From NCBI GenBank assembly GCA_002269645.1, contig NIVC01000067.1, positions 62,001-126,000 of the forward strand: 64,000 nucleotides of DNA, read 5' to 3'. The translations under genes and the position numbers were made by a program. Shown in pieces: positions 12,901-59,345 of the stretch. The notes under the pieces were generated by a model. The model ran no database searches, was not told the DNA's origin, and was given only the letters and a program-made list of their open reading frames with translations. This stretch comes from Macrostomum lignano (lineage: Eukaryota). How positions within the stretch are numbered: the stretch's first letter is position 1; every line of letters begins with the position of its first letter.

Positions 12901-14448
12901 ATTTTTCTACCAAAGGGAGTCCCCTCTGTCAATTTTTTGCTGCGCCAAGACGCTTGGCAACGCACGCAGAAAAAATTCAAGAATGCGGCCCAACTTTTTG
13001 TTGCGCACCTTCTCAAAAGAAAAAAGTCGCCAGCCCTCTGGACCGTCGATATATTTCAAAATTCTTCCCGAAGGTCGGATTTTTGCCATAAGCGCCATAA
13101 GCGCTAGTGCATTGAATACACTCTCCCTGTGCACCAATCAGCACTGCGCCTCAGCGCAGCCCTGTCAAGCCTCCAAATTTCATCAGCAAAGTCGATCAAC
13201 ATGTTTGCATCAGCTCTGACTTCGTTAGTTTCTGACCTTCACCCAGGCGGAGCTTCTGGACCTTCAACAGGCGGCTGCTGAAGGCGATTATGGGCACCCT
13301 GTTGCAAATTTATCTAGTTTCGCTGATCAATCCTCGACAGTGGGCAAACCTCAACTGCTGGACATCCTTAATCCTTATCTAGTCTCTCAAGCATTCCGTC
13401 ATCACCCTGACGCCATCGGCACCTTCAACAAGTTCTTATGCTCATTAAACTTTAAAATTGAATCAAATTTTTTACTCAGGAAGGGTTTTAATTTTAAAAA
13501 TTAAAAAAAGCTTTTTTTGAATTTATGTCACACAGATGGAACTTATGATCAAGTAAAAGTACTGTTACAATAAAAAACGAAGGCATGTTAAGGCAAAAGT
13601 ACGCTAGTTACAATAGCTAAAACGTACTGTACAATAACAGGAATGACTACCTTGCATGTAGACGGTTTCTTTATCGTCATAACAATTTTACTTGATTTAA
13701 GTGTCACCTGCATAAGATTTTTTTAAATACCGTTTGGGTTTCTACATTGTATTCGCCTGTTTCCTACGGCGTCGGGATGGTGACGCAATGTTTTAGAGAC
13801 TAGTTGAGAATGCCCACCAAAATTCGCAACGGGGTGTCCATAGTCACCTGGTGCCATCTTTTGAAGGTGCTGACGGCGTCAGGGTGATGACGGAATGCTC
13901 GAGGGTCTTCCCCTTGGTAGTTTTACTGTTACGAAAGAACTATGGACTGCTGTTTTCCTTCCTGACAACCGAGTAATACTTTAGGCCACAATTTTATTAT
14001 CAGGGATCAAGTCTCTCGAATTTATCCTTTACTCGTTTAGTTCCTGATGGATATTTTCCGGTGTTAACTATGGTACAAAGCGCAAAAAAGAAGTAGCTCA
14101 GACAGATGCTGTAGCAGTGCCGCGGAACGCACCTCAAAGCTCGGGTGCGTGTTCGGCGCCCGAGTGAGGGTTGCTTGGCAGCGCATAATTCATGTCTCCC
14201 ACGCTTGTAACCACACTCAGGTCAACCCTGTCGCCTTCCACCGATCATCGGCCACACAACAATGGAGAATTTTGACATCCTGGAACAGTTTGAACGTTAC
14301 CGAGTTCACGATGTGGTCAGGTACGAGACTTACTGGAACTACAGGTTCCGCAGCAGCAACCAAAGCGTAATTTTCGCAGTGTGCGAGGCACGCACTGGAC
14401 AGCAGTACGGAGAATGGAGTCCTGTGTCCGAAGCCTACCTATACGATG
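971..14448 (+). CDS. Multi-exon sushi/CCP-like repeat extracellular protein, 26 phase-1/phase-1 exons with one module each; 5' and 3' ends not resolved
   Basis: AG/GT-bounded exons read by hand: 971-1195, 2295-2549, 3032-3250, 3448-3672, 3766-4002, 4099-4317, 4408-4662, 5485-5721, 5857-6081, 6174-6431, 7178-7396, 7494-7718, 7801-8058, 8269-8487, 8610-8834, 8917-9174, 9382-9600, 9678-9902, 10021-10278, 10369-10593, 10877-11095, 11209-11460, 11727-11948, 12043-12258, 12560-12820, 14221-14448. Each encodes a C-x-x-P...(C)xxG(Y/H)xL...C...W...(C) module of about 70-87 aa with many NxS/T sequons. No start codon, signal peptide or TM segment was found. A possible short last exon is 14689-14720 (DSFVRVCHVV*), low confidence. 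Confidence 0.9.
1377..1930. repeat. GA-rich low-complexity tract in intron 1 of the sushi gene
   Basis: Almost pure purine on +, with an internal direct duplication (aaatagg..agaaaaggggagatgagataggagagagg near 1382 and 1560). Confidence 0.9.
7494..9902 (+). repeat. Recent ~1.11-kb tandem duplication inside the sushi gene (exons and introns)
   Basis: Exons at 7494, 8610 and 9678 are near-identical, as are 7801/8917 and 8269/9382. Intron 7719-7800 matches 8835-8916. Offsets are 1116 and 1113 bp. Confidence 0.9.
13386..13903. mobile_element. MITE-like inverted-repeat element in the last sushi intron
   Basis: 13386-13428 (ctcaagcattccgtcatcaccctgacgccatcggcaccttcaa) is the reverse complement of 13861-13903 at 40/43 positions. 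The interior is AT-rich and non-coding. No target-site duplication was identified. Confidence 0.5.
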
Positions 14449-16342
14449 GTAAGGTGTTGAATTTTGCATGCATATCACTGCTTCATAGTCATTTCCAGAT
14501 TCTGTTTGGCCTCTGTGAGACCTCAAAACTTTTCCGGCGGTCCATGCAAACGGGCCATAAGACACGGTAAGAAAATTAAAAGAATGCATTTATTTGAATA
14601 CTTACTGTACATACTTGTAAGCTGTTTAAACATTAAAACTGAAGTAAGTTTCGGTAAGTAAAAGGTAAACGTCTCGTTTGTACCACAGATTCCTTTGTCC
14701 GTGTATGTCATGTTGTATGAGTATTCGATGCGTTGATTTTTCGACTTTCCGATAAGCTTTTAATTGATATTCAAGCAGCGATCATGTTTCTGCACACATT
14801 GTTGTTATCTTCATAGTTTTTAATTCATTTAACACTGTGCGTTTTTTAAAGATGATTTTTATTATTGTTGACATTTTAAAAGTACAATACACTATTGGCT
14901 TTTCGAAGTTCGAATACTTCAAAGCACTTTCTACGTGTACAATACCTTTACCTTTTAAAGATCCAAGTTTTTCATATACTTTTTTAAGTTTGACATCTTA
15001 GAATATTTTGCTTTCCTAAATGACACCAAAAGTCAGTTAGCCGTGTTTCTTTGCCGCTCACCGCATGTTTGTACTGCTAAGCCCATGATGCGGTAACAAG
15101 GCTTCGTCACGTATCGCTCGCTTAAGACGCTCCTTTGAGTGCCTGTAAACAGCACTTATCCATTCTGCACTTGAGAATCCTTGGATTTTTTCCTATCTCT
15201 CTTAATCCCGTACACTCACCCTCGAGAGCCTCTGTTCTCCCTCTCATTTTCGCTAAAATTTAGCTTATCTTAGTGAAAACTTAAAGTATACTATTGGAAT
15301 GGCTCGCAAGAATTGTTTACATGAGTAACCTACCAGTCGTTTAACCCGCCTAAAAACATTTTATTCCAATAATGCTTCTCAATAGACACACAGGTGCTAA
15401 AGTTGTGGCTTTACATTCGTGTACTCTATGTTGATTGCCAATGCCAGTGTCAAATAAAACAATGATGCAAACTTACTCCATTTAATGCTTTTCGGAAGTT
15501 CTCTTTTTCCTTATAAATCGGTTGTTTTCTGTTGCTGAGAGAAAATCATCAAACTAGAAAAAAGCAAAGGCCAAATTGAAAGCGAAAAATAAGCACTGAT
15601 ACACACTGAGTATATACGTGCTAAAATCGCTGCAGCATCAACCATATTTATGCTAGCATTGAAGCCAAATTTGACTCTTATTTGCGATGCATGCTCCCAA
15701 GATCCCTACAAAAAATGTGTATTTGTTGAAACATTTGAAAATGCTAAACCTGGTTTTCTTAGGTTAGTTTTAGAATGTCTGAAGGTTCACTAAGCTGTTT
15801 TTCTCACAAATTTGTGTAGCATGCGTGTCATGTCAACTCTCAAGCATAAAAATGGCGGTAGAAACATCTGTCAACGCAGTTTATCAAAAGTACATTGTAA
15901 TACCCTGTTGTTGCACATATGCAAGTAACAACCAAGCGAGGTATTGCAACCAAATAAAGAATGACCTCCGGAAACCCTCTTGAACTGTAGTAGCAAAAGT
16001 TTATTGAAAATTCCAGCTTATCGGGGCTCTTCGGCTCGTAATGGTTTTCTTGGAATTATTTTTCGTATTTTCCTCTAGTTGTCGAAACTTTTCCTAAAGT
16101 ACATGTAAGTCTACATGGATCGCAGAATTCACATGCATTGAAGTTTCTGTTAAAGTTTTGGCTGATTTAGTTGGAAGCATTCTGCTTCCTCTCCAGGACT
16201 AGTTTTTCTTCGCTTCTGTAAAGAAGGCCTGATTGGCTGATCTCACGCACGCCATCTATCCTCGAACTTCGATGTAGAGTACATATATTACTTCGTAGAA
16301 CAGAAAAGTAAATCAGAAAGTGTAAGTAAAGCAGAGGTCACA

Positions 16343-17391
16343 ATGGGCATTGAAAGTCACAACGGAACAACCAGCACTGCTGGCGGGCCAGCGAGTGGTT
16401 CGGCTCTATCGAACATCCAAATTTCCCAAATTGTACTCGAGCTAATCATCGCCGTGATCGCTGTGCTTGGCAACTCGCTCACGATTGCCGCCGTCCTGCT
16501 GGACAGATCCATGAGGCGGCCGACCAACTATCTAGTGGCCAGTCTGGCTGCCACTGACCTTCTGGTGGGCATGGTGGCGATTCCGCTATCCTTGACTGCA
16601 GGTGACGGGTTCCCCAGGTGAGGCTGTGGACTCTGCAATAATTTAGCTCGCACTGAAATATAAAAAGTTTCTGTAGCAATCAGTTTTGATTCTTCAGGAA
16701 CAATTTTCTGGGCTGCCTAACGGTCAACTCGCTGATCGTGAGCTTTACGCAGGTTAGCATCTTCGGATTGCTGGCGATTTCGCTGGAACGCTTTGTTGCT
16801 GTGCGCTTTCCGCTGCGGTACCGACTCCTGTGTGACAGCCGCTGCGTCGCTGTGACAGTGGTCATGACCTGGAGCTGCGGCGCCGCTGTTGGCTTCGTCC
16901 CACTCATGGGCTGGAACCTCGGTCCGCCGTCTGACGGTTTCTGCAGCTTCGCCAGCGTGATAGACATGAAATACATGGTGTACTTTATATTCTTCGGCTG
17001 TCTGCTGGTGCCGCTGTTGGCTGTAGTCTGCGTCTACAGCTACATATTTAAAGTGCTGATGCAGCGTCGCTCAAGCCGTTCGTCGAATGCACAGTCGGAG
17101 TCGGCTGATGAACGTCGAGCAGCGCGTAGCCTGGCGCTTGTCGTTCTGCTATTCGCCGCTTGCTGGGTACCGTTGAATGTGCTCAACTGTCTCAGCCTTC
17201 TGTGCGGCAGTCGGTGCAGCTTCCCCTACGAGTTGCTGGTGTTCGCCATCCTGTTGAGCCACGCAAACAGTGCGGTCAACCCGTTTGTGTACGCATTCAC
17301 TAATACGCAGTTCCGAAAGGCCTACCGTCGGCTGCTGCTGTGCCACAGGTGCAGAGATGTGTCTCCGCTGCACACGGTTGCGCAAGCATAG
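16343..17391 (+). CDS. AdoR: Adenosine-receptor-like class A GPCR, 2 exons (16343-16617, 16698-17391), 322 aa
   Basis: Seven hydrophobic helices with GN (TM1), SLAxxD (TM2), C...TQVSIFGLLAISLERF (TM3), CWVP (TM6) and LSHANSAVNPFVY (TM7). The TQxSI, LNC and SHxNS motifs are typical of adenosine receptors. The splice CCCAG|gtgag...ttcag|G restores the frame. Confidence 0.85.
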
Positions 17392-18401
17392 CTGCTTAGG
17401 CCTGCATGCATAACGGCATGTGGCTTCTTCGAACTGCAATTTTTTGTTTTTACCATCAATATTTGTAATAGTACTACTAGTACTTTTAGTATTATAGACA
17501 CTTAGACACTTTCGGTATGGCTGTAAAGGTTCGAGACCCTGTTAGTGACACTGTCAGATCAAATTAGAGCTACAAACCTTCGTAGTTCTGTTTTACTTCT
17601 TCTTTCTACTTTTCTTCTTCTACTCTCCTTCTACCAAGAAGATAGAGACTTGAAGAAAGGTTCTACTTATTTTTATGTACCATATGAGAAGAAAAATCTA
17701 TATTTCTTCAAATTCCCGCATCCACAGAAATGCGAAACCTGCAATTATCCCCAGTATCATTGCTACTAGAGCACGTTCCATGCGAAGCCGCGTAGTTACG
17801 ATTCGAGTGACCTATGAAGCATGCGAAATAACAAGCAAATTCACCACTCTTTCATGTCTATGCGCATAGATGTTACCGTAGCCTCATCAAGTGTCTGGTT
17901 AATCAAAGTCATTCATCTGCTTGGTCACGTCCCAGAGTCAGGATTTTCTTTGACTTAAATTCTGATGCAGGGAGAGTTCTTATTGATTGAAAAACCTTGT
18001 CTGACAAAAATATAGATATCAGCTTGACCTCGTGCAAGAATTTCCTGGTCAAAAGATTTCTGAAGTCAAGACAACACAAATATCAGATAGAAAGAGAATA
18101 TGAAAAACAACTTTGAGAGCAAATTTTTCGAAATAGCTCGTAGATACTGCTACGAATAATAATATGTTATTAAATTTAATTAAACCAAAACTCAAGCTGA
18201 TCCCTTCAGTACTCTTATGAGCTATTTTCCCACCACTCAATTACGCGACGCATCAAAGCTTTAACTGAAATGGAGCGGGAGAAGTGCCTTAGGCTTAAGC
18301 CAAGCTCATTACACAGCGGGGGCACTTCGAGATTAAAGACGAGACGCCAGGGTGGGGGATGACTCTGTGGAGAGCCAGTGTACATCAGCTGAAATGTTGT
18401 A

Positions 18402-20465
18402 CTACTCGAAACCACCGAGGGTAAGTCGGATAAAGTCACGAAAGTTGATCTCCCCACTAGCTTGACCTTCGGCTGAGCCGTTAGCCACCGCTTCGGCCAG
18501 CATCCATCCGGTCAACTGGCTCTCCGTCGGTTCGCCAAGACCGGTCAGACAGTTCGCTAGTGAACTCGCCGACCAGACCATCTTCCCACTGCTCTGGACC
18601 TCTGCAAGCAGCTGGAAGGCCTGGCCAAGTGTGCGGCGGCGCTCGCCTCCTGTCCGGTCTGTGAGGCCGCGGCACACCCGAGTGACGAACTCGGGATATC
18701 CTAGCGTCCCAGTAGCACCGTCTCGAGCGTACTGCAGCCATTCCTGGTGCGAGGTTAAGCAGACGAGGATACTATGCTAGAACATTAGTTAACTCTGTAA
18801 GAGCTGGGTAGGGATATCACTATTACTGGACCACAACTCCAAAAGTGCGGCCCATGAAATCAACAGTAATTCTAAAAAGCTGAACAAAAGAATGCGTACA
18901 CATTTTGGCAAAATCAGATTTCCATATGCTCTTTTCCGGATAAAAAATTTACCATTTCACCAGTTTCACCTTCGTGTAATTATGGAACTTGATAAAGCTC
19001 ATAATCGAGCGCTGAGAGTAGAAAGTTGAGTTGGATACAAGTAAATTCCATTGTTCAAACAGCACTATACCAGTGTATTTGCTCAAGCTACCTGAAAAGT
19101 AGCCGAGCTACGTGGTTCTGTACCCAAGAGCAGTTCACCAAGAGCCAGTAGCTCTGCCAGAAGCTCTGCGAGTCCAAGATTTGTTAAATCAGTTGGCAAT
19201 TGGTTCAGGCCCATTTTATATTTGATTTGAGCGATCGGTGACCTGCGAAGCTACCAGCAATAATGTGAACTGGCCTTAAAATGAGGTTGAAAAAGCAGTC
19301 TGAATGGTGGAGTTTTGCAAAAGCTCGCTTCCACAATCAATTGAAAATAGTTTCCACCTTTGACAACGGAGTTATCGCGGAAACATTTATATCATCGCGA
19401 GGATAGCTACCAATTCAAATAAATGTGACCTTGTCCATGTGACCTGACCTTACCCAAGCTCAATCTTGCTCGAACTCAAGGTAAAGCACCCAACCAATGT
19501 CGAACTCAGACAGTGCAAATCCTTTGCTACGTAACTGGAGGAATATCCTGTTTAGCAACCGGTTAAGCTTCGTGAAATACTAGAAGTTTTACTTTCTTGC
19601 TCTCCAACTCCAATTCAGCAGCAATTATAGCATTAGTTTTACTCGTACCTATTGATAATCTATGCATGTATGTCATTGAGACTTTTACATCAATTTTAAC
19701 AAATTTAATCACCATCAAACTTATAGTATACTTCCTATAGTAGTATACTCCGAAAATGTCCTTATTTTCTATTTCATACACATGCAGCATGCCGAAAAGT
19801 TATGCTCATTCTTTTTTTTCAAGCGATTGATCAAATGATGGATGATATATGGAGGAGCACTTTTACGAGTACGAGCTATCTCAACCAGCAGAACCCCACA
19901 GAAAGCCAATAGCACGGTTTTTAATTCCCACCATATAGTTTCATGCACGATAGATACCAGTGTATAAGGGTTTATTGGTGAACTCAGGCAAGACGAAAGC
20001 AACAGGTGAGGCAGCCTTCTCGCAGAAATTAAAGTCCCATAGTAGCGAGCTTCTATTGATGAATGATGATTGCCTGTGTCACCCACATCACACATGCCAC
20101 GCCTAGCTTAGGAATAATTTTTCGAGTCTAATTTTATTAAAGAGCTAAGGATTTGCTGTAATTTGTCATTGATTTTAATGCTTCATCAATGAAATCATAC
20201 ATACAACGGGTCAGGCAATGAAGCTCGTTAATCCATAGCTAGAGAACTAAAACCGAACTTGAACCCCATACGCAGCCTTCGCTCTCACCCTGGCCATTTC
20301 CTGGCTGGCTCCAGGCACTCGGAAGGCTCGCATGGCCGCCAGGAGGTCGCTCTCGCCTATTTGACCGTCTCCGTCCTGGTCCAGATGGCCGAACGCTTCT
20401 TGCAGCTCAGCTGCCAGTTCGCCGCTAATGCGCATCAGAATGTCGGCAGGCGGATCGGCAGTCAT
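18402..20465 (-). CDS. Calmodulin/myosin light chain-like EF-hand protein, 2 exons (20289-20465, 18402-18743), 172 aa
   Basis: ELQEAFGHLDQDGDGQIGESDLLAAMRAF is EF1. The spliced continuation EWLQYARDGATGTLGYPEFVTRV...LGQAFQLL...LANCLTGLGE...GEINFRDFIRL follows the four-EF-hand pattern. Phase-0 splice with GTGAGA donor and CCAG acceptor. Confidence 0.8.
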
Positions 20466-21177
20466 GGCAATGAAGCTGAGTGACTGCTTGAGGAGATGCT
20501 TGGGGAGGCCAAGCCCTTCGACTACTTGAGTTCAGTCTAGAATTTAATTTTCACGCATATGGGTTTGCTTTCACACTTTATGGGGCAAAGCCGGGCGGAA
20601 ATTTAATAAAGAACTGATGGAAGCACAATGACAATGGGGCGCCCATCGGCAACTTCCTCTCCTTTCACCCGTTCGTCATTCTGAGCGCTTCGGTTAAGTT
20701 GAAGCGTATGAATAGTGAGTTCAGGCCCTTCTGGTTTCTCTCTTACTATTCAATAGTGCCTAGAGAGAATCTAGTCATAGTCAAATATTTGCTTCTAGCA
20801 AAACGTCTCTGTAGTCCAGGGAGTGCTTCACGTTAACCGAAAAGCATGATTTGTATTTTATGGCGTGCAATTTGTCTCTCTCGCCTTTGTCGTCAAATTC
20901 GCAGCTTCGAGTTCTTTGTGTTTGCTGCTAAATACTCTGGTGTATGTGTTTAACTACTCATAAGAACCTAACACTCAAAGCATCTACATGTATAACTGCC
21001 AAAGAGTAAGAAATTGAAAAGGTAATGCTTGGCCAGCCATTTTATATTGGTGTTCTAGATATGCAATCCGTCCAGCTGCGCTTTATTTCAATTGGGGTGC
21101 ACATTTTAGCTATGAATTTTTTGCGCTAAGCTAAGAAGTTCATAATCAATGTTTAACAAGATTCGATCGATTCTTCA

Positions 21178-21859
21178 CTATTCTCGTCCGCGAACTCCAA
21201 CCTGGCTCATCAGCGAGTCCACCTGTCGCTCAAGGTTGTCCAGCTGCTGTTCGACTGCGTCAGATCGACTGTTGATGCGTTCCGTTGTTCCGCTGAAGCT
21301 GCTGATTAGCGATTGCAGAGCCGATGCTACCTGTGGTCGTTACGGTCCATATTTAGGTCACAGGATTTCAGAAGAGTGCTTAGAACTTACTCTCGTGAAT
21401 GTATGAATTTACTACCGTAAGGCTCTGTGTTCATTTCTGGAGAGGGACTGTACTTGGACTGCCTGATGTGAGACGCCGGAGCGCTCGACACTTCTGGCGG
21501 GGTGGACTTTCGTCATCTGACGCAACCGTTACCGCATGACTTTACTTTTCTGGGTAGCATCTTTTGTTATGTTGTTTTTTTGGGGGGGGGGTTCGAATAA
21601 GTGTTTATCAGAAAAGTAGTTTGACTGGCTTCCTATCAGATGCAATAGTTTCATTGTCTAATTCCAACTATGATCGATACAATCAACTGTACAGTCCTTA
21701 TAGCAGCACACTCACATGCGTCTGCAGCTCATCTACCGACTGGGGATCTGCAGTTCCATACTGCCTTCGTTGCTGCTGTTGCTGCTGGTCCCGCTGTAGG
21801 CTGAACAAGCTGGAACCGTCTGTGAAGCCGTCATTCAGTCGAAAATCTTTTGCGTCCAT
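21178..21859 (-). CDS. HSBP1: Heat shock factor binding protein 1-like, 2 exons (21716-21859, 21178-21330), 98 aa
   Basis: Spliced product ...TADPQSVDELQTH|VASALQSLISSFSGTTERINSRSDAVEQQLDNLERQVDSLMSQVGVRGRE* aligns by eye with the HSBP1 pattern [59 protein letters not shown]. Phase-0 GTGAGT/CACAG splice. The second exon is absent from the ORF track. Confidence 0.75.
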
Positions 21860-24310
21860 ATTTGAATGCAAAAAATTTATATTGATTTCAATGCAGAGAT
21901 AATTTTTCCCTGCTCCTGCAGCACTCAAAGTCGATTCTGTTCCTTATCTATCTCGCCTCCCGCTCAGCTTTCAAGCCGATTAGAATCGCAACCCCGTTTC
22001 ATTTTGTTCTCATTCTACTCTCCAATCCACTCTGCTCCTCTCGCATCACAACTCTGTCCCAAACCTTCCCTGAGAGGAGAGGCTTACCCCCCCCCCCCCC
22101 GCGGAGATGAGGTACAGAGGTTGGGCTTGAAACCCGCTAGTGCACTAAATCAAGCCAGAGAGAAGAATTGATGATGACTTGGGATCGCGATGAGGCAGCG
22201 GGGAGGCAGGGACAATGGGAAGAACGGAAGGAGGCGGCACCGCGGCACGCAAGGCTGAAGCGAGGTGGAGCAGCTCAGCGCGAGATTTGCGAGAGAGGCA
22301 TGAGAGGAGCGGAGTGGAGCTTGTAGCGCGCGCGTCTCGGTTGCAACAATTGTTTTGTTGCTGCCCGCTTTCAGGCGCTTAGACGGGCCGCCGCCCCATT
22401 CAAAGCATGCGCGAAGTGGGGAGCTGGACTGATTTTTTTCTACCTCTCTCCCATTGTTGTCACGGGCAACCAACTGATTGAGCCTGCGCGGGTTTGAGGA
22501 TTATGGATGAATTGGGAATGCGAGAAGGCTAATAAGCTATAGCCTTAATTCTATGAATATGAATGATTTCATCTCTGAATCCCTATTTAATTGTTTCAAT
22601 AAATGGTCTTTCCCTTGGCAGTCAAACATATCCACGATAAAATGTAGTTTCTGACAATGATTGATGCTTCTGTTTTTCGTTTCGTTCTGTGCCCCCTTCC
22701 ATGGTAAAAAAAGCAACTCAAAATGCAACCAGTGCTACTAATGAGTAGTGATTCAGTATTTGCATGAGCTTGTTCCTGCGTACAGCATTGGCGCTTGTAT
22801 GCGCTCGCAGTCTGTAGTTGCGAGCGTCTGTGGTTGCAGTCCGCATTCGATGCGCTCGCAGCAGAATCCACACGGACAGCGGCCTGATGTAGCGGCATGA
22901 TTGAGCCTGCGTGGGTTTGAGGATTATGGATAAATTGGGAATGTGAGAAGGCTACTAAGCCATAGCTTTGATTTGCGAAATTTGCAACATTCGCGCGGCA
23001 GTAACTCCAGTCGATCGGTGTCTGCTGAGCTTTCCAGTGCAACTGCAACCAATGACCGAACAGCTGGTCGGCATTGTCAAACCGGCCCCCAGTGTCGAAG
23101 CGAAACATCCTATGATTCGAAGTACCTGGGTGTCCAAAACTTGACATCGGAACTAAAGTACCTAAAGTACCTTATTTGAAAAGCAGTTCACTCTACCACA
23201 AACACTTTGTTCCAACTGAAAAAGCTTTCTCTACCTGGAAATCAGTTTGCTGTACCCGAAAATACCTTTGCTCTACCTTGAAGTCAGTTCGTTCGATCTG
23301 TAGATTAGTTTGCTCCACCTTTTAATCAGCTTGCTCTAACTGGAAAACAATTCTCTCAGTTTAATCTACGTCTTTGATATGGCCGAACTCCAGTTACAAT
23401 GAGAAAGTTGTTGGGTTCGATAAAATTCATACAAAAAATTGGTAAGCCTGTGTTCTCTACGAGTCCTTCCGAGTCCGTTCCCACACAGTGCAGTGCAGTA
23501 GTCCAGTCTCTAGTCTCGGTACACGAGCTACAAAGAAAACGAATTTCGAGTTGATTTCGCGCCAATCTGCGCTGCTCATAATTTCTTTGCTGTTGACCCG
23601 GCCGAATGGCTCGTCGGGTACTCATCTTCCTTTTTTAATCTGGTGCTCATAGAAATTTGCATCGAAATTAGCTTTGTCATTCGACATGTTAACGATAAAT
23701 GGAAATAATGGATGCTTCCAGCAAGCTGAATTGAATTCAACGGATATAGCTTGGCGAAATAGAGAAAAAGTGTGCTGTTAGCTTGTAGTAGCGTGTAGTA
23801 ATTTGCTTGTTCTTATTCAGTTTTTAAGATTACTTATGTACGCTAATTTTTCATATGTTTTAAAAATATTAACAAATAATATTTAATTTGCTTTAATTCA
23901 TGTCTTTATTACTCAGAAGTCGTAAAGTTGCCGCACTTTTCAAGGAACGGGGTTGGTGTGCGGGGTTGGTGTTATTCTGTGTCATATCAGGCCTACGCAA
24001 GCAATACGGGTACGGGGTACGCAGTCTAGCTTTATTCCTTGGTCTGTTGGGCTTCACCGGCCTGGCTATGCATAGAACGGGGTAGGGAGACTAACTGTAC
24101 AAAAATAGCAAAAAATTCCAGGAAAGAAAAGAAAGGACAGAGAATGTGTAGAATAAATAGACAGGGAGCAAAGCAAGACCTCTCTGCCATTGTACGCTCT
24201 CCTACGATTAGTATTTAACGTTCATTAGAGCAACCACAAGCCAGTTATAAAGCAAAAGTGGCTTGCCTCTGTTCCGTTCAACACTCAAGCCTAAGCTGCA
24301 GAATTTGTTC

Positions 24311-26016
24311 ATGGATCTTCTGGCTGATTTTGAGGTCATCAAAGCCCTCGGCCAGGGCGGTTTCGGATCGGTGCTGCTGGTGAAGGACAAGCGAGCCAAC
24401 AAAGAATACGCTATTAAGCTGATCCCATCAAGATGTCAAGAGACTGATGTTGTCGTTCGAGAAGTCGAAACTCTGGCAAAAATGGCTGGCATAGAGGGTA
24501 CTGTTAAGTACCACCACTCCTGGTATCAACAATTTGACACGCCCACTAGCTTTGAAGACTTTCGAAAAGAGCTAGAGGCAAAGACAAGCGACTCAATTCA
24601 TCTGTCAGAATGTCTCAGCTCAGGATCATCAAACGATGGCCTACAAGTTGGCATTTCTACTATTCTCTTCATCAAGATGGACTACTTTCAAGGGGTAAAC
24701 CTAAAGGAGTGGCTTCGATCCCTCTGCAAAACGGCGAACCAACAGCCAAATGGTTCGATGACGAAGCCCTGGGTGCATGGTCAGGTACTGCTCGCATTCT
24801 ATAAAATTCTGGAGACTGTGCTGCGAATTCATCATGCCGGCATTCTTCATAGAGATCTGAAGCCTGAGAACATTCTGTTCAAAGACCCCTGCGAGATTTG
24901 CATCTGTGACTTCGGACTTTCAAAGTGTGTTACTGGAAACCATAGTTTTGAAGGTTCCGACCAGGCCCAACACACTCACGACATAGGTACCAGGACGTAT
25001 TTGGCTCCCGAACTTTTGCTGAGTCCACCATCTCCACACAGCGAACAGTCTGACGCATATGCCCTTGGGCTCGTTTTCTTAGAGATGCTGACCATCTTTG
25101 GATGCGTTACGGAATCGGAAGCGTTACAGAAGAAAAACGAAATCTTCAAGTGCCACAAAAATGGCGAGATTCACGAGAATGCTAAACAATTCGAAAATGA
25201 AACGGATCTCATTCAGAAGCTCCTTCACAAGGATCCATCGCAAAGATGTAGCGTTGAAACGGCTTTGAACGACAATTTGTTTAACAAAGTGCCTTTTGTC
25301 TGTAATATTTGTGGAATTACGGAAGAAAAAGGAATTCTGGGTATAGAATGTTTCAAGCAGCACTTAGAAGGCAAGAATCATAAAAAAACGTTGAAAAATG
25401 GTTGCAAGGTACAACTCAGACAGACCCGACGCCAATTGCGCCGCAGGTCACCCAAGCCAAAGGTACAACTCAGACAGACCCGACGCCAATTGCGCCGCAG
25501 GTCACCCAAGCCAAAGGTACAACTCAGACAGACCCGACGCCAATTGCGCCGGAGGTCACCCAAGCCAAAGGTACAACTCAGACAGACGTGAGACCAATGG
25601 CACCGCAGGTCACCCAAACGAAAGGTACAACTCAGACAGACGTGAGACCAATGGCGCCGCAGGTCACCCAAACAAAAGAAGAAACTCAGACAGATCTGAC
25701 ATCAACTTCATCATCATTCGTCCAACCAGAAGGCCGTCATAAGTCGGAATATTTTTGCTCCGTGTGTCAAATATTCTCCAGTGGCCAAACAAACTTTGAT
25801 GCTCATCTAGCCGGGCAGAAGCACAAGAAGAAGCTGAAGAAAATTCCTCACTTTGAGCGACCAGCACATGCAGGTGATCAGCCACGAACCGGTGTTGACA
25901 GCAGCAGAACCGCGGAACTGAACTCTATCCGCAGTGACGTTGATGGCTTGAAGGCCAGAATGTACAACATGGAGACCAAGCTTAACCAGATTCTGGCGTT
26001 GCTACAACAACAGTGA
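24311..26016 (+). CDS. eIF2-alpha kinase family protein with ZnF - 6xTQT - ZnF - coiled-coil C-terminus; intronless; one frameshift at A7 25382-25388 (568 aa if A8)
   Basis: Motifs DFEVIKALGQGGFG, YAIK, REVE, VKYHHSW, a Ser-rich insert, LFIKMDY, HRDLKPENI, DFGLS, GTRTYLAPE and SDAYALGLVFLEM. These are all catalytic motifs plus the eIF2AK-type insert between subdomains IV and V. Then CNIC...HLEGKNH, and in the other frame KGTTQTD repeats, CSVC-x12-HLAGQKH and a heptad tail. An upstream exon is possible (acceptor-like ctgcag at 24301). Confidence 0.85.
25408..25698 (+). repeat. 54-bp coding tandem repeat (18 aa, GTTQTDPTPIAPQVTQAK), 5 full units plus a partial sixth
   Basis: Units start at 25408, 25462, 25516, 25570, 25624 and 25678. 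Units 1-3 are nearly identical; units 4-5 form a second variant (TQTDVRPMAPQ). Confidence 0.95.
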
Positions 26017-29497: not shown

Positions 29498-32400
29498 TTA
29501 GCCCAGGTAAGCAGAAAAACCAGCGCTGCTCCGAATAACGCTGTTGGGCTCCTCGTAGCTGCAGGTAGAGTCGGCAGCTGACGATAAGTTCGACATCTGC
29601 TGGTAGGGCAAACCGCCAATCAGCGCAACCTGCGGCCGTGGCGGCAGCTGAGGCGGAATCACCGAATTCCGATTCTCGCTCTGATTTGAGCGATTTGCCG
29701 GCCCGGGCACTTCGTAGACAGCTGCGGATGAAACATTGCCGACATCTAGTGTCGCTTCATCGCCAACGTCGTACACTGGGTTTTCAGCCTCGGTCGAACC
29801 GCAACCCTTAAAGACTGCGGTTGTGTCAGACAAGCGACGGAACCGCCAGAACGGCAAAAAATGGCAAAATGACGGTCTCAAATATAACAGAATCAGTAGC
29901 GCTGAAGATAAAATAGTAATTGTGATCACGAAAGCGATCACAAAGGCGATCACTGGCGTCCACCAAGTGCTGTCATCTTTGCTTAGCTGCAATGTTGGGT
30001 CTATCGGTGCAGTGCAGTTGGGACTCACCTGGCCATCGCGGCAAAGACAACTAAAGCTACCAATCAGGTTTTTGCATACATGGGTCTCGTTATTGCAAGG
30101 TCCGTCTCCTTCCAGGCACTCCTCAATATCCTCCTGGCAACGATCCCCTCGAAAGCCTGTTTTACAATGACATTCAAAGCTCCCTGGCAGATTTGCGCAA
30201 ACACCGCCATTAAGACACATCGTTGTGTAATTGTTCAATTTGCACTCGTCGATGTCCTCTGCGCAGTGCCTTCCTGTCCAGCCTGGACCGCAGATGCAGC
30301 TATAGTTACCTGGTAAGTTCTTACAATAGCTTCCGTTGCCATTGCACAATAGGCTCTGGTGATCAAATTGATTTGTGCACTCGTCGACATCTACTTGGCA
30401 GTGATCCCCACGAAATCCGAGTTTGCATTGGCATTTAAAGCTCCCCGGTAGATTTACACAAACGCCGTCGTTAAGACAAATTGCACTGGAATCGTTCAAT
30501 TCGCACTCGTTGATGTCCTCTGTGCAGTGCCGTCCTGTCCAACCTGGACCACAGATGCAGCTGTAGTTTCCTGGCAAATTCTTGCAAAAACTGCCGTTGC
30601 CATGGCAAAGTAGGTTGTGGTTGTCGCCATCGGCAGCTTGGTTAGCGCACTCGTCTACATCGTCTTGGCATTGCTCACCGCTAAACCCAGTCGGGCAGAG
30701 GCAGACGAATCCACCAAGGATATTACGGCATGTGCCACCGTTTAGACATACTGACGAGTCAAATCCACTTTCCAATGCGCATTCGTCGATGTCCTCGGTG
30801 CAGTTTTGACCTCGCCAGCCCGGACCGCAGACGCACTTGTAGTCTCCGATCAAGTCTTCACAGATGCTGCCATTTCCGTTGCACGGCGAACTCAACTGAC
30901 CGTCATCAATGGTTTGAACCGCGCACTCATTTATGTCCTCTTCGCATTTTTCGCCCCTATAACCCAATGGACAGTGGCAGGTAAAGCTGCCTGGCGTGTT
31001 CTCACATTTTCCGCCATTGAAGCAGGCAGCTAAGCTTGACTGCGAGCACTCGTCGATGTCCTCTGTACAGTTCTGGCCGCGCCAGCCTGGCCCGCAGTGG
31101 CAGCTGTAGGTGCCGAACCAGTTCTCGCAGACGCTGCCCTTTCCCCGACACGGCGAGATCGATCGGCACTCGTCGACGTCGAACTGGCAGGCGTCGCCAT
31201 GGAAACCAGCGGGGCAGGCGCAGCCGACACGGGCGATGCAGGTACCACCATTTTGGCAGGGTCTGCTGTGCTGGCAGAGCGCTATAGGTACAGTGCAATC
31301 ATTACCTACAAGGAGTTTGATTACCACATTATAAATTTGTTCGATCCGATTCCTATGTCAATCCATGCTCAACGGAATTTTTCCCACCTACCTCCGAACT
31401 GAAGAGGGCAGGCGCAAACAAAACTTCCAGGTAAATCTTCGCACGTTCCACCGTTCTGGCATGGACTGCTGGCGCAGAAAGTCCTTCGGCAATCTCTGTT
31501 GGGATCGTAGGCTGCATAGGAAAAGGAAATTAATAAACTACTCGTATTTCTTGTTTACTTATCATTTTCTCAACTTGAAATCACACGGAGAAAGTGATAA
31601 AACTGATTTTCGCCATACTGGACTCGCAAACTTTGTTTCCGTCACTGGTGCAGCCGTAGTAACCGAGCTCAGGAGATCTCGTCGGCTGGCAGAACTTCTT
31701 GCACTCGGAACCGTAGTAGTTGACCTTGCACCGAACAGAGATTTTCAGCCACAGTCTGGAAGACACGGCGTGTGAAGATAAAGGTGATGTTAAAATGCAA
31801 AGTTGCATAAACTATTTGATTGATACTTTAGTTGGAGTCAGATCGTTGAATCAAATTAGATTTAAACCCTCCGCAGGCGTGTACGTTTAGCATAAGCCTG
31901 TAAGGCATGCAAGAAGGCAGGGTACATGTCAAGTACCGGGCTGTCTGGGTTAACCCCTACATTAACGAACATTGAGGCAGCTTTTCATAATGAAGCAAAA
32001 CAGCTTTTACAAGCATTTATTCACTGCGGCGTCGCCCCTTTCGTGCGTGTCGCGTTTGTATTTCGGTGGTTAAATTTAACATTGCATTCAACTCACTCAG
32101 CCTTCGATTTGCCTTCGTCAGTCAGTCGAATCTGTGCCGACTCAGGCGAGTTGTCATCGAACGGGCGCGCATCCGCAGAATATTTATGACTGAAAATCCC
32201 CATCAGGTCGTGATCAAATACGGAGTCGTAGTCGTAGACTCGAACCGTGACTTTTACCCAGCGCTGAAAAATTGCGAGCAAGTAAATTGAAAGCAAATCT
32301 GAAATCTGCTTGACGACTTGCGAATATCTGAGTACATTAGCGATGTGCATTTTACCGCATAGTTGATGACTCTGCACACGATCGGGTTTCTGATGTTCAC

Positions 32401-33758: not shown

Positions 33759-34264
33759 TGCTGAAAGCTGATAGTTGGATCAGTCAGGATAAATTTGACA
33801 CTGCAGACTTGATTTGTCCACACTTTTCAGGTACTCATATATATTACTCTGCTTCGCCTTCGCCTTCGCCAGGAGATCTGGTAGCAATAACACGTGACTG
33901 TTTGCACCTAATTAAAGTTTGCGCTGCCAAATTGGCTGGCTACATTAATAATAACTCCACACTGAACCCCCCCACCCTGCATCTTTACAGAGCCTTTCGA
34001 CTCTGAACAAGCGTTACTGTTAAGGAATGCCATGAGATAAGCTTCCGATTCTCACGAATCTTGCGAGCTGTTTGGAAGGAAATCAATTAACTATTTTATT
34101 GTCAACATTACCGATTGCTTTTAATTACTTTTTTATGCATTGAATTGCGAAGATTCTAAAATGAATGCTAAATTTTACGAGCCACTTTTCTTGACGCACT
34201 GGACCAGCTGCGTGACGGTTTCTAATGGATGATATTTAGTAATGACTCCTGATCACATGCTGTG

Positions 34265-36600
34265 ATCCAATGTCTCACAGTGAGATCCACTGTCTCACAG
34301 TGTGATCCACTGTCTCACAGTGTGATCCACTATCTCACACTGTGATGTAATATATCACAGTGTGATGTAATATCTCACAGTGTGCTCTGATATCTCACCG
34401 TGTGATCTACTATCTCACAGTGTGCTCTGATATCTCACCGTGTGATCTACTATCTCACAGTGTGATGCACTATCTCACTGTGTGATCTAATATCTCACAG
34501 TGTGATCTACTATCTCACAGTGTGATCCACTGTCTCACAGTGTGATCCACTATCTCACAGTGTGATGTAATATATCACAGTGTGATGTAATATCTCACAG
34601 TGTGCTCTGATATCTCACCGTGTGATCTACTATCTCACAGTGCGATCCACTATCTCACAATGTGATCCACTATCTCACAGTGTGATCTAATATATCAAAG
34701 TGTGATGTAATATCCCACAGTGTGCTCTGATATCTCACCGTGTGATCTACTATCTCACAGTGCGATCCACTATCTCACTGTGTGATCTAATATCTCACAG
34801 TGTGATCTACTATCTCACAGTGCAATCCACTATCTCACTGTGTGATCTAATATCTCACAGTGTGATCTACTATCTCACAGTGTGATCTACTATCTCACAG
34901 TGTGATCTAAAATCTCACAGTGTGATCTACTATCTCACAGTGTGATCTACTATCTTACAGTGTGATCTACTATCTCACAGTGTGATCTACTATCTCACAG
35001 TGTGATCTACTATCTTACAGTGTGATCTACTATCTCACAGTGTGATCTACTATCTCACAGTGTGATCTAATATCTCACAGTGTGATCCACTGTCTCACAG
35101 TGTGATCCACTATCTCACAGTGTGATCTAATATATCAAAGTGTGATGTAATATCTCACAGTGTGCTCTGATATCTCACCGTGTGATCTACTATCTCACAG
35201 TGCGATCCACTGTCTCACAGTGTGATCCACTATCTCACAGTGTGATCTAATATATCAAAGTGTGATGTAATATCTCACAGTGTGCTCTGATATCTCACCG
35301 TGTGATCTACTATCTCACAGTGCGATCCACTATCTCACAGTGTGATCTAATATCTCACAGTGTGATCTACTATCTCACAGTGCAATCCACTATCTCACTG
35401 TGTGATCTAATATCTCACAGTGTGATCTACTATCTCACAGTGTGATCTAAAATCTCACAGTGTGATCTACTATCTCACAGTGTGATCTACTATCTCACAG
35501 TGTGATCTACTATCTCACAGTGTGATCTAATATCTCACAGTGTGATCCACTGTCTCACAGTGTGATCCACTATCTCACAGTGTGATCTAATATATCAAAG
35601 TGTGATGTAATATCTCACAGTGTGCTCTGATATCTCACCGTGTGATCTACTATCTCACAGTGCGATCCACTATCTCACTGTGTGATCTAATATCTCACAG
35701 TGTGATCTACTATCTCACAGTGTGATCTACTATCTCACAGTGTGATCTAATATATCAAAGTGTGATGTAATATCTCACAGTGTGCTCTGATATCTCACCG
35801 TGTGATCTACTATCTCACAGTGCGATCCACTGTCTCACAGTGTGATCCACTATCTCACAGTGTGATCTACTATCTCACAGTGTGATCTAAAATCTCACAG
35901 TGTGATCTACTATCTCACAGTGTGATCTACTATCTTACAGTGTGATCTAATATCTCACAGTGTGATCTACTATCTCACAGTGCAATCCACTATCTCACTG
36001 TGTGATCTACTATCTCACTGTGTGATCTAATATCTCACAGTGTGATCTACTATCTCACAGTGTGATCTACTATCTCACAGTGTGATCTAAAATCTCACAA
36101 TGTGATCTACTATCTCACAGTGTGATCTACTATCTTACAGTGTGATCTACTATCTCACAGTGTGATCTAATATCTCACAGTGTGATCTAATATCTCACAG
36201 TGTGATCCACTGTCTCGCCGTGTGATTCACTATCTTACAGTGTGATCTACTATCTCACAGTGCAATCCACAATCTCACAGTGCGATCCACTGTCTCGCCG
36301 TGTGATCTAATATCTCACAGTGTGATCTACTATCTCACAGTGTGATCTACTATCTCACAGTGTGATCTAAAATCTCACAGTGTGATCTACTATCTCACAG
36401 TGCGATCCACTATCTCACTGTGTGATCTAATATCTCACAGTGTGATCTACTATCTCACAGTGCAATCCACTATCTCACTGTGTTATCTAATATCTCACAG
36501 TGTGATCTACTATCTCACAGTGCAATCCACAATCTCACAGTGCAATCCACAATCTCACAGTGCGATCCACTGTCTCGCCGTGTGATCTACTCTCTCATGG
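34265..36600. repeat. 20-bp satellite (tgtgatctactatctcacag), more than 100 units with higher-order variant blocks
   Basis: 20-bp periodicity is visible as vertical columns. Variant series (tatatcaaag / tgtgatgtaa / tgtgctctga...caccg) recur. Confidence 0.97.
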
Positions 36601-42993: not shown

Positions 42994-43019
42994 TGTTTTT
43001 AAGGGAAGGATGCTCTGAA

Positions 43020-58429: not shown

Positions 58430-59345
<916 letters not shown>

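What the first reader, a model, noticed from the sequence alone, without database searches (positions are those of the whole stretch)
24311..26016. Candidate PKR analogue: eIF2-alpha kinase fused to dsRNA-type zinc fingers, a six-site LC8 (TQT) ladder and a coiled coil
Seen: an intact eIF2AK-type kinase with no N-terminal sensor evident. It is followed by two C2H2 fingers ending H-x5-H (HLEGKNH, HLAGQKH) that bracket six evenly spaced (K/Q)xxTQTD motifs, then a heptad tail (TAELNSIRSDVDGLKARMYNMETKLNQILALL). Established: U1/matrin/JAZ-type fingers bind RNA, often dsRNA (JAZ/ZNF346, Wig-1). KxTQT is the canonical DYNLL1/LC8 motif, and multivalent TQT arrays (ASCIZ/ATMIN, Nup159) are zippered into dimers by LC8. 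eIF2 kinases activate by dimerisation, and dsRBM-type PKR is known mainly from vertebrates. Inference: this could be an independently assembled invertebrate dsRNA/stress sensor whose activation threshold is tuned by LC8 occupancy and repeat number. I do not recall this architecture being described.
Basis: partly seen in the sequence, partly recalled or inferred. Interest (0 to 1): 0.92.

Follow-up and report, generated by a model that had tools for sequence, protein, structure and literature searches.

The report
Frameshifted flatworm eIF2-kinase zinc-finger gene
A single-exon gene of the flatworm Macrostomum lignano joins a divergent stress-type (eIF2-alpha family) protein kinase to RNA-type zinc fingers, a repeat-encoded linker and a coiled coil; this domain combination has no relative in the databases, but in this assembly it is split by a one-base frameshift, and the proposed LC8 "ladder" is weakly supported.

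Summary
The described features are all present, in Macrostomum lignano assembly Mlig_3_7. They do not form one open reading frame. The assembly encodes a 426-aa product (24311-25591). The TQT/ZnF2/coiled-coil half lies in another frame (25384-26016). One extra A fuses them into 568 aa, in either the A7 run (25382-25388) or the A5 run (25394-25398).

The kinase belongs to the eIF2-alpha kinase family. Its best single-domain scores are 90-106 bits to PKR, PKZ, GCN2 and HRI, against 50-60 bits to other kinases. It joins the family clade with 96% bootstrap, branching basally outside the four subfamilies. No upstream sensor exon was found.

ZnF2 is a matrin/U1/JAZ-class finger, just below Pfam thresholds. 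ZnF1 is a paralogue with a 4-residue insertion. The tail has five clean heptads.

The six TQTD sites come from one young 54-bp minisatellite, so they are not independent evidence. Their flanks (K/Q at -4, G at -3) score among the worst known LC8 binders.

None of 268 related kinases has such a finger, and the C-terminal half has no homologue. Eukaryotic eIF2-kinase/dsRBM fusions already exist in a snail and an annelid.

Verdict: a plausible new variant of an RNA-regulated eIF2 kinase, with intactness, expression and LC8 binding unproven.

The parts
24290..24301 (+). Acceptor-like site (..CCTAAGCTGCAG) preceded by a pyrimidine-rich tract. It ends 9 nt before the ATG and could be an SL trans-splice or cis-splice acceptor.
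   Evidence: Read directly from the sequence. Inference only; no RNA data.
24311..25591 (+). ORF as it stands in the assembly: a 426-aa product (P0001) made of kinase, ZnF1 and an out-of-frame Arg-rich read-through of the repeat.
   Evidence: Called as a single-exon gene on NIVC01000067.1. The kinase frame through the repeat is the least coding-like of the three (LLR -57.9).
24329..25282 (+). Protein kinase domain of the eIF2-alpha kinase (PEK) family.
   Evidence: Pfam Pkinase 1.1e-41. Top PDB sequence hits are GCN2, PERK, HRI and PKR. Single-domain scores are 90-106 bits to eIF2AKs against 50-60 bits to others. 96% bootstrap clade. AF2 model pLDDT 82.9, with top Foldseek hits GCN2 and PKR.
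24533..24664 (+). Kinase insert of about 44 aa between beta4 and beta5, an eIF2AK hallmark.
   Evidence: Alignment with PKR, PERK, GCN2 and HRI against MSK and PDK1.
25301..25381 (+). ZnF1: C-x2-C-x16-H-x5-H, a matrin/U1-type finger with a 4-residue hairpin insertion.
   Evidence: Aligns to ZnF2 (local BLOSUM62 score 59-65). Weak match to the Mod5 tRNA isopentenyltransferase finger, which has the same long spacer (E=0.37).
25382..25398 (+). Frame junction: A7 run (25382-25388) and A5 run (25394-25398). One extra A in either fuses the kinase frame to the C-terminal frame.
   Evidence: The frame-1 stop TAA at 25381-25383 lies immediately before it.
25384..26016 (+). C-terminal reading frame (210 codons plus stop) holding the TQT array, ZnF2 and the coiled coil. 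It has no ATG before 25597.
   Evidence: Codon-usage LLR is +17.2 in this frame against -45 and -47 in the others for 25729-26013. No homologue in 5.8 billion proteins.
25406..25694 (+). 54-bp minisatellite, 5.4 copies at 93% identity, encoding the T/Q/P-rich 18-aa repeat KGTTQTDPTPIAPQVTQA.
   Evidence: TRF. Unit-by-unit comparison.
25414..25692 (+). Six TQTD sites: 25414-22, 25468-76, 25522-30, 25576-84, 25630-38 and 25684-92. The 8-mers are LQGTTQTD, AKGTTQTD x3, TKGTTQTD and TKEETQTD, with 10-residue linkers.
   Evidence: Scored with a PSSM built from Table S4 of PMC6607443.
25612..25674 (+). Two extra TQT triplets in APQVTQTK (25612-20 and 25666-74), near-identical to the validated non-binder DDX1 NAQVTQTK.
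25756..25824 (+). ZnF2: canonical C-x2-C-x12-H-x5-H matrin/U1/JAZ-type finger.
   Evidence: Pfam zf-C2H2_jaz 5e-4 (20.6 bits against cut-off 22.6) and zf-met 1e-3. Best PDB hits are the Star-PAP ZnF, ZMAT2, ZFa, PRP9 and ZNF346/JAZ (E 0.012-0.17).
25909..26013 (+). C-terminal 35-aa heptad (coiled-coil-type) helix, followed by the stop at 26014-26016.
   Evidence: In one register, 9 of 10 a/d positions are L/I/V/M.

Best explanation
This is a lineage-restricted, single-exon gene of Macrostomum lignano.

Shown: it encodes a divergent but catalytically complete eIF2-alpha-kinase-family domain that starts at the N-terminus. C-terminal to it lie, in order, a matrin/U1/JAZ-class zinc finger, a disordered-looking T/Q/P-rich linker encoded by a young 54-bp minisatellite, a second finger of the same class, and a five-heptad coiled coil.

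In this assembly the two halves are separated by a 1-nt frameshift in an A-rich stretch. The most likely causes are a residual homopolymer error in the PacBio/Pilon assembly or a very young disabling mutation in one copy of this neopolyploid genome.

Inferred mechanism:
- The coiled coil makes a parallel dimer.
- The two fingers per chain bind structured or duplex RNA.
- RNA binding, possibly with stiffening of the linker, brings the two kinase domains together for trans-autophosphorylation of the activation-loop Thr.
- The active kinase phosphorylates eIF2-alpha Ser51 and shuts down translation.

In logic this is a PKR-like sensor with the sensor module at the C-terminus. LC8 binding to the TQT array is possible but is not needed for this model and is not favoured by the motif flanks.
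For: Source and gene call:
- Contig NIVC01000067.1 of GCA_002269645.1, which is M. lignano Mlig_3_7.

Kinase family:
- The nine best PDB sequence hits are GCN2, PERK and HRI (85-94 bits); the best non-family hit, PDK1, reaches 71 bits.
- Local phmmer gives 90-106 bits to PKR, PKZ-like, GCN2 and HRI in a single stretch, against at most 60 bits to PDK1 or MSK.
- In the NJ tree the query plus 29 eIF2AKs form a clade with 96% bootstrap.
- The alignment shows GxGxxG, the VAIK Lys, the alphaC Glu, HRDLKPxN, DFG, the activation-loop GT, T-x-x-E in alphaG, the VKYHHSW and LFIKMDY family signatures and a 44-aa beta4-beta5 insert.
- AF2 model pLDDT 82.9; top Foldseek hits are GCN2 and PKR.

C-terminal frame is coding:
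- 210 open codons, with codon-usage LLR +17 against -45 in the other frames.
- ZnF2 matches zf-C2H2_jaz and zf-met and RNA-binding fingers in the PDB.
- ZnF1 is a paralogue of ZnF2.
- The heptad pattern is clean.

Context:
- No sensor domain is detectable in 6.9 kb upstream.
- A kinase-N, RNA-binding-domain-C layout has a precedent in Pomacea XP_025115876.1, which is kinase plus C-terminal dsrm.
- The GenBank annotation of this assembly is RNA-seq derived (PMC5730564), so the gene call hints at transcription. This is an inference.
- GC content matches the flanking DNA, and no relatives were found on viral contigs.
Against: - The deposited sequence does not encode the fused protein. The assembly was Pilon-polished with Illumina DNA and RNA-seq, so A7/A5 may be real.
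- No second copy, orthologue or transcript-derived protein turned up in 5.8 billion and 1.8 billion protein libraries. There is therefore no evolutionary conservation to show that the architecture is under selection.
- The kinase is basal and long-branched. The Arg equivalent to PKR R262, part of the back-to-back dimer salt bridge as I recall from Dey et al. 2005, is Asp here. Substrate and dimer geometry are therefore unproven.
- Both finger hits are below Pfam thresholds.
- This finger class also serves in spliceosomal, ribosomal and tRNA contexts, so 'dsRNA sensor' is one option among several.
- A constitutive coiled coil would be expected to activate an eIF2 kinase constitutively unless something restrains it.
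Confidence: 0.45

Rival explanations
1. The frameshift is real. The locus is a young pseudogene or null allele in a redundant neopolyploid genome, or it makes only the 426-aa kinase plus ZnF1 protein with an Arg-rich tail. The 568-aa fusion is then not made from this copy.
For: - The assembly shows A7 and A5 and was polished with Illumina DNA and RNA reads.
- The only database protein is the 426-aa form, with one member on one contig.
- No orthologue or paralogue was found.
- DV1 has 180 Mb of duplicated blocks at 95% identity or more, which allows relaxed selection.
Against: - Apart from the one shift, 1.7 kb is free of stops.
- All catalytic residues are intact.
- The C-terminal frame keeps the kinase's codon usage.
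- The read-through frame is the least coding-like and hits stops in repeats 4-6.
- Homopolymer deletions are the typical residual error of PacBio CLR assemblies (general knowledge).
Confidence: 0.3
2. The TQT array is an ordinary recently expanded minisatellite that encodes a flexible linker. It is not an LC8/DYNLL ladder. Dimerisation, if any, comes from the coiled coil alone.
For: - The units are 93% identical at the DNA level; the first three differ by 2 nt; the sixth TQTD is the partial last copy.
- The window holds at least 20 other minisatellites, and 15% of the genome is simple or tandem repeat.
- In a PSSM built from 79 binders and 32 TQT non-binders (leave-one-out AUC 0.77), the motifs fall in the lowest 3-25% of binders.
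- K or Q at -4 is absent from all 79 binders, and G at -3 occurs once.
- PMC6607443 stresses that many TQT peptides do not bind LC8.
Against: - The TQT anchor with D at +2, no pre-anchor proline within the 8-mer, and a small polar residue at -2 are all allowed.
- The binder FAM83D motif RSTTTQTD is similar.
- Ten-residue linkers sit close to the 6-9-residue range that gave homogeneous LC8 duplexes.
- Weak motifs are rescued by multivalency and by adjacent coiled coils.
- The period is a multiple of 3 and the frame stays open.
Confidence: 0.55
3. One reading: an LC8-zippered, zinc-finger-based dsRNA sensor whose threshold is set by LC8 occupancy and repeat number.
For: - Every component is compatible with a parallel in-register dimer: array spacing, C-terminal coiled coil, RNA-type fingers and an eIF2AK kinase.
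- NEK9 is a precedent for a kinase with an LC8 site (HSKGTQTA); that motif is in the binder list. That it sits next to a coiled coil is my recollection.
Against: - The motif flanks are poor.
- There is no conservation evidence.
- The fusion itself is unverified.
- dsRNA specificity of two isolated fingers is unknown.
Confidence: 0.12
4. The kinase is a divergent PEK-like enzyme whose substrate is not eIF2-alpha. The matrin-type fingers would tether it to a ribonucleoprotein such as the spliceosome, pre-ribosome or tRNA, rather than sensing foreign dsRNA.
For: - It sits basally, outside PKR, PERK, GCN2 and HRI.
- The R262-equivalent residue is not conserved.
- The best finger matches are spliceosomal or ribosomal: ZMAT2, PRP9, SF3A2 and ZNF593, plus Star-PAP and Mod5.
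Against: - The family signatures and the alphaG T-x-x-E are retained.
- ZFa and ZNF346, which bind dsRNA, are among the hits.
Confidence: 0.15

Closest known systems
PKR (EIF2AK2) and fish PKZ
   Same: An eIF2-alpha-family kinase domain with a beta4-beta5 insert, fused to a nucleic-acid-binding module. Activation is by dimerisation and autophosphorylation (established knowledge). Single-domain scores of 91-98 bits to PKR and PKZ-like proteins.
   Different: The sensor is N-terminal dsRBM or Z-alpha in PKR and PKZ. Here there is no N-terminal domain, there are C-terminal C2H2 matrin-type fingers, and no dsrm was detected. The kinase is not in the PKR clade.
Lophotrochozoan eIF2AK-dsRBM fusions (Pomacea canaliculata XP_025115876.1; Dimorphilus gyrociliatus CAD5111339.1)
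   Same: Invertebrate eIF2AK-family kinases joined to dsRNA-binding domains. Pomacea has the same order, kinase first and RNA-binding domain at the C-terminus.
   Different: They use dsrm domains (PF00035), not zinc fingers. They have no TQT array or coiled coil. Identity to the window kinase is only about 30-33%.
JAZ/ZNF346, ZFa, Wig-1/ZMAT3, ZMAT2, U1C, Star-PAP (zf-met / zf-C2H2_jaz / zf-U1 class)
   Same: ZnF2 has the C-x2-C-x12-H-x5-H spacing and the HLxGxxHKK helix. These proteins are its best PDB and Pfam matches.
   Different: Scores are below Pfam thresholds. There are only two fingers, about 120 aa apart. ZnF1 has an x16 spacer, like the Mod5 finger. None of these proteins carries a kinase.
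Multivalent LC8 clients (Nup159 DID, ASCIZ/ATMIN, FAM83D/CHICA) and NEK9
   Same: Repeated TQT anchors in a low-complexity region with mid-length linkers. ASCIZ also combines zinc fingers with a TQT array. NEK9 is a kinase with an LC8 site (HSKGTQTA, listed); that it lies beside a coiled coil is my recollection.
   Different: Flanks depart from binder preferences at -4 and -3. The sites are near-identical copies of one young repeat rather than diverged, conserved motifs. No binding data exist.
HRI (EIF2AK1)
   Same: 96 bits to an HRI2_3H-containing homologue that also ends in a C-terminal coiled coil.
   Different: There is no HRI N-terminal helical or haem-binding domain.

Membership tests
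eIF2-alpha kinase (PEK) family | Kinase domain closer to eIF2AKs than to any other kinase family | tested here: met
   PDB phmmer top 9 are GCN2, PERK and HRI. 90-106 bits against at most 60 bits for other families. 96% bootstrap clade.
eIF2-alpha kinase (PEK) family | Insert between beta4 and beta5, plus the family signatures around it (..RYYxxW.., L[YF]IQME..) | tested here: met
   44-aa insert at aa 75-118, with VKYHHSW and LFIKMDY.
eIF2-alpha kinase (PEK) family | Intact catalytic residues and the activation-loop Thr (PKR T446 equivalent) | tested here: met
   GQGGFG, AIK, REVE, HRDLKPEN, DFG and IGTRTYLAPE are all present.
eIF2-alpha kinase (PEK) family | Back-to-back N-lobe dimer salt bridge (PKR R262-D266 equivalents; recalled from Dey et al. 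2005) | tested here: inconclusive
   The D266 equivalent is present (D6). The R262 equivalent is D2. One PKR in the alignment also lacks the R/D pair.
eIF2-alpha kinase (PEK) family | Phosphorylates eIF2-alpha Ser51 | not testable with these tools
   Needs a kinase assay or a yeast toxicity assay. The alphaG T-x-x-E motif is present.
PKR (EIF2AK2) proper | N-terminal dsRBMs, and a kinase inside the PKR clade | tested here: not met
   No dsrm in the protein or in 6.9 kb upstream. Basal position in the tree.
zf-met / zf-C2H2_jaz / zf-U1 (matrin-type RNA-binding fingers) | C-x2-C-x12-H-x5-H spacing | tested here: met
   ZnF2 has the exact spacing. ZnF1 has x16 and is a paralogue with a 4-residue insertion.
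zf-met / zf-C2H2_jaz / zf-U1 (matrin-type RNA-binding fingers) | Profile score above the curated threshold | tested here: not met
   zf-C2H2_jaz 20.6 against 22.6 bits, zf-met 19.8 against 21.2, zf-U1 15.2 against 22. PDB hits have E 0.012-0.17.
zf-met / zf-C2H2_jaz / zf-U1 (matrin-type RNA-binding fingers) | Binds dsRNA or structured RNA | not testable with these tools
   Needs EMSA or filter binding.
Multivalent LC8/DYNLL client | TQT-type anchor | tested here: met
   Six TQTD sites plus two VTQTK sites.
Multivalent LC8/DYNLL client | Flanking preferences of validated binders (H-bonding D/S/T/N at -4; K/R or aliphatic at -3) | tested here: not met
   K or Q at -4 occurs in 0 of 79 binders. 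G at -3 occurs in 1 of 79. PSSM percentile is 3-25% among binders.
Multivalent LC8/DYNLL client | Motifs in a disordered region, with linkers that allow stacked dimers, next to a self-association domain | tested here: inconclusive
   The linker is 50% T/Q/P. Linkers are 10 residues, against the 6-9 reported as optimal. A coiled coil is present. No disorder predictor was run.
Multivalent LC8/DYNLL client | Physical binding to LC8 | not testable with these tools
   Needs ITC or pull-down. No multimer prediction was available.

The most novel reading that the evidence does not exclude
Flatworms independently built a PKR-like antiviral or stress sensor: an eIF2-alpha kinase whose dsRNA recognition is done by matrin/JAZ-type zinc fingers instead of dsRBMs. 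Its dimerisation threshold would be set by LC8 zippering of a copy-number-variable TQT minisatellite, backed by a coiled coil.
Probability: 0.1. Interest if true: 0.85.

Novelty: new variant of a known kind. Interest (0 to 1): 0.48.

Why it matters
eIF2-alpha kinases are modular: one conserved kinase is joined to interchangeable sensors. Known sensors are dsRBM in PKR, Z-alpha in PKZ, a HisRS-like domain in GCN2, a luminal domain in PERK and a haem-binding domain in HRI.

A version with C-terminal RNA-type zinc fingers and a built-in dimeriser would add a new sensor solution. It would also suggest how an animal without a canonical PKR couples RNA sensing to translational shutdown.

Macrostomum lignano has RNAi and transgenesis, so the idea can be tested directly. 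If the frameshift is real, the locus instead illustrates how quickly novel domain combinations arise and decay in a repeat-rich neopolyploid genome.

Tried and rejected
- **Single-sequence AlphaFold of the kinase** gave pLDDT 37 and was unusable. It was redone with a 40-sequence alignment.
- **Foldseek** puts GCN2 and PKR on top, but CaMKII, CDK2 and PDK1 follow closely, so fold alone does not discriminate the family.
- **Programmed -1 frameshifting at the A-run** was rejected. The A-run is not a canonical X XXY YYZ heptamer in the zero frame. The 92 nt downstream fold no better than shuffles (z=0.42).
- **An intron joining the frames** (donor AAG|GTACAA at 25408/9 to a CAG|GTC acceptor in a later repeat, giving 38+54k nt) keeps the frame but is unlikely. 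That sequence is GC-rich and coding-like, with no pyrimidine tract, unlike the neighbouring gene's 79-nt AT-rich intron. The called gene range also equals the CDS length.
- **Upstream sensor exons**: no Pfam hit in three frames of 17400-24400.
- **Paralogues in the window**: none.
- **Homologues of the C-terminal half**: none.
- **Viral origin**: no relatives in IMG/VR, and GC content matches the flanks.
- **Literature** on an eIF2 kinase with zinc fingers or LC8: nothing relevant.
- **LC8Pred itself** could not be run. I built a crude PSSM from its published training set instead. Its leave-one-out AUC is only 0.77, so the negative result is indicative, not decisive.
Full report
**Source and observation**

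The window belongs to contig NIVC01000067.1 of GCA_002269645.1. Several papers identify this as the Macrostomum lignano Mlig_3_7 assembly. It was built from PacBio reads with Canu and polished by Pilon with Illumina DNA and RNA-seq.

- ATG at 24311.
- A Pkinase domain at aa 7-324 (E=1.1e-41).
- Finger CNIC-x16-HLEGKNH at 25301-25381.
- Six TQTD motifs exactly 18 residues apart between 25414 and 25692.
- Finger CSVC-x12-HLAGQKH at 25756-25824.
- A 35-residue tail ending at the stop at 26014-26016. In one heptad register, 9 of its 10 a/d positions are L/I/V/M.

**The fusion is not encoded as written**

The kinase frame passes the A7 run (25382-25388). It then reads the repeat as KVQLRQTRRQLRRRSPKP and stops at 25591. 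This is the 426-aa product P0001 that the database holds for this contig.

The TQT/ZnF2/coiled-coil frame is open only from 25384, directly after a TAA at 25381-25383. It has no ATG before 25597. One added A in the A7 run gives the 568-aa protein. One added A in the A5 run at 25394-25398 works equally well. That version yields HKKTLKKW after ZnF1, closer to ZnF2's HKKKLKKI (alignment score 65 against 59).

The C-terminal frame is clearly coding:
- It has 210 open codons.
- Its codon-usage log-likelihood, trained on the kinase ORF, is +17.2 against -45 and -47 in the other frames for 25729-26013.
- The kinase frame through the repeat is the least coding-like (-57.9) and hits TGA in units 4-6.

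A single-base indel at the junction is therefore the most economical link. I rejected two alternatives:
- Programmed frameshifting. The A-run is not a canonical slippery heptamer in frame, and the downstream RNA folds no better than shuffles (z=0.42).
- An in-repeat intron. The candidate has no pyrimidine tract, unlike the neighbouring GPCR gene's 79-nt AT-rich intron. The called gene range also equals the CDS length.

These tools cannot decide whether the missing base is an assembly error or a real mutation. The Pilon polish argues for a real mutation. The otherwise intact 1.7 kb and the error profile of PacBio homopolymers argue for an error. I put the chance that a fused protein exists at about 0.6.

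**Kinase family**

- Against PDB sequences, the nine best distinct hits are GCN2, PERK and HRI (85-94 bits). PKR scores 72 bits, and the first other family, PDK1, scores 71.
- The word-indexed and exhaustive library searches were dominated by multi-kinase-domain proteins. They revealed no relative above about 36% identity other than the window's own product.
- Re-scoring all 268 retrieved proteins by single domain separates the families. A short PKR-like Logan protein scores 106 bits, GCN2-like 102 and 96, PKR with two dsRBMs 98, PKZ-like 97 and an HRI2_3H-containing HRI 96. PDK1 and MSK score at most 60.
- An NJ tree on 268 trimmed columns with 200 bootstraps puts the query with all 29 eIF2AK sequences at 96%. 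It branches basally, outside PKR, PERK, GCN2 and HRI.
- The alignment shows every catalytic motif, the activation-loop GT, a T-x-x-E in alphaG, the family signatures VKYHHSW and LFIKMDY, and a 44-residue beta4-beta5 insert.
- The residue aligned with PKR R262, which I recall as part of the dimer salt bridge, is Asp.
- An AF2 model built with a 40-sequence alignment reached pLDDT 82.9. Its best Foldseek hits were human GCN2, PKR and yeast GCN2, but CaMKII and CDK2 follow closely.

The conclusion is a divergent, probably active member of the eIF2-alpha kinase family. It is not specifically a PKR.

**No N-terminal sensor**

The kinase domain starts six residues after the Met. Three-frame translation of 17400-24400 gave no Pfam hit at E<=0.05. 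A pyrimidine tract and a CTGCAG end 9 nt upstream of the ATG. This could be a spliced-leader acceptor (inference).

**Zinc fingers**

ZnF2 matches zf-C2H2_jaz (5e-4, 20.6 bits against 22.6), zf-met (1e-3) and zf-U1, all just below threshold. Its best PDB matches are:
- the Star-PAP finger,
- ZMAT2,
- Xenopus ZFa,
- PRP9,
- ZNF346/JAZ,
- ZNF593,
- SF3A2 (E 0.012-1.2).

ZnF1 is not recognised by Pfam. It aligns to ZnF2 with a 4-residue hairpin insertion. It weakly resembles the Mod5 finger, which has the same long spacer.

The class assignment is right. This class binds dsRNA in some proteins and spliceosomal, ribosomal or tRNA helices in others, so 'dsRNA sensor' remains an inference.

**TQT array**

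TRF finds one 54-bp unit in 5.4 copies at 93% identity. Units 1-3 differ by two bases, and the sixth TQTD is simply the start of the partial last copy. The six sites therefore count as roughly one observation.

The window contains at least 20 other minisatellites, about 24% of its length by summing the array spans. Simple and tandem repeats make up 15% of this genome.

To test motif quality I took the 79 binders and 32 TQT-containing non-binders of Jespersen et al. 2019 (PMC6607443, Table S4) and built log-odds matrices. Leave-one-out AUC was 0.77-0.79.
- The window's 8-mers (LQGTTQTD, AKGTTQTD x3, TKGTTQTD, TKEETQTD) fall in the lowest 3-25% of binders, and below or around the median of the non-binders.
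- The main reason is K or Q at -4, seen in no binder, and G at -3, seen in one.
- The canonical Lys sits at -3. Here it is one position out of register.
- Two extra TQT triplets (APQVTQTK) almost copy the non-binder DDX1 NAQVTQTK.

In favour of binding:
- TQT plus D at +2.
- Similarity to the binder RSTTTQTD.
- Ten-residue linkers, close to the 6-9 residues that gave homogeneous LC8 duplexes.
- The documented rescue of weak motifs by multivalency and by adjacent coiled coils.

I put LC8 binding at roughly 0.35-0.45, and the full LC8-threshold model at about 0.1.

**Novelty and context**

- The C-terminal 210 residues have no homologue at E<=1e-3.
- None of the 268 related kinases carries a C-x2-C-x10-18-H-x5-H finger.
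- No viral-contig relative exists.
- Literature searches found nothing on such an architecture.
- eIF2AK/dsRBM fusions are not confined to vertebrates. Pomacea canaliculata XP_025115876.1 is kinase plus C-terminal dsrm, and Dimorphilus CAD5111339.1 has dsrm plus kinase twice.

Placing an RNA-binding module after an eIF2 kinase therefore has a precedent. The zinc-finger, repeat and coiled-coil module does not.

**Verdict**

This is a new variant of a known kind: a modular eIF2-alpha kinase with an unprecedented C-terminal module. It rests on a single, frameshifted, orphan locus with no conservation or direct expression evidence. The RNA-seq-based origin of the GenBank annotation is only a hint of transcription. 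Interest is moderate rather than very high. The decisive first step is simply to count the A's in reads across 25370-25410.

Noticed in passing
window 25394-25398: A second A-run (A5) 6 nt downstream of the A7 run would restore the fused frame just as well if it were one base longer.
   Followed up: yes
window 25405-25591 (kinase frame): The annotated 426-aa product ends in an Arg-rich triple repeat, KVQLRQTRRQLRRRSPKP. This comes from reading the minisatellite out of frame. By codon usage it is the least coding-like frame.
   Followed up: yes
window 16343-17391 (+): An intact two-exon rhodopsin-type GPCR gene (7tm_1, E=2.6e-34). Its 79-nt AT-rich GT..AG intron lies at about 16619-16697. It is not among the called genes for this contig.
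   Followed up: partly
window 29498-31327 (-): A 609-codon ORF made of calcium-binding EGF repeats (EGF_CA, E=5.5e-53), probably one exon of a large extracellular protein gene.
   Followed up: partly
window 1-14570 (+); L001:1-260: The upstream neighbour is the end of a called 3360-residue gene with faint Lectin_C, WSC and Sushi hits.
   Followed up: no
window 32664-63999: Very dense minisatellite landscape. Examples are 20 bp x117 at 34261-36597, 31 bp x50 at 38787-40383, 18 bp x92 at 41327-42994, 63 bp x12 (97% identical) at 47004-47762, and AGAAGG x139 at 58457-59304. The last explains four overlapping long ORFs there. Roughly a quarter of the window is tandem repeat.
   Followed up: partly
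window 22475-22550 and 22898-22973: A 76-bp direct repeat (91% identity) about 1.4 kb upstream of the kinase gene. Its meaning is unknown.
   Followed up: no
window 24290-24301: A pyrimidine tract followed by CTGCAG ends 9 nt before the start codon. It looks like a splice or spliced-leader acceptor.
   Followed up: no
proteins P0016, P0021, P0032, P0035 (metagenome and Logan contigs): A group of short (about 370-470 aa), Asn/Ile-rich eIF2AK-like kinases from environmental contigs scores 82-92 bits to the window kinase. Their organisms are unknown (protists or giant viruses?).
   Followed up: no
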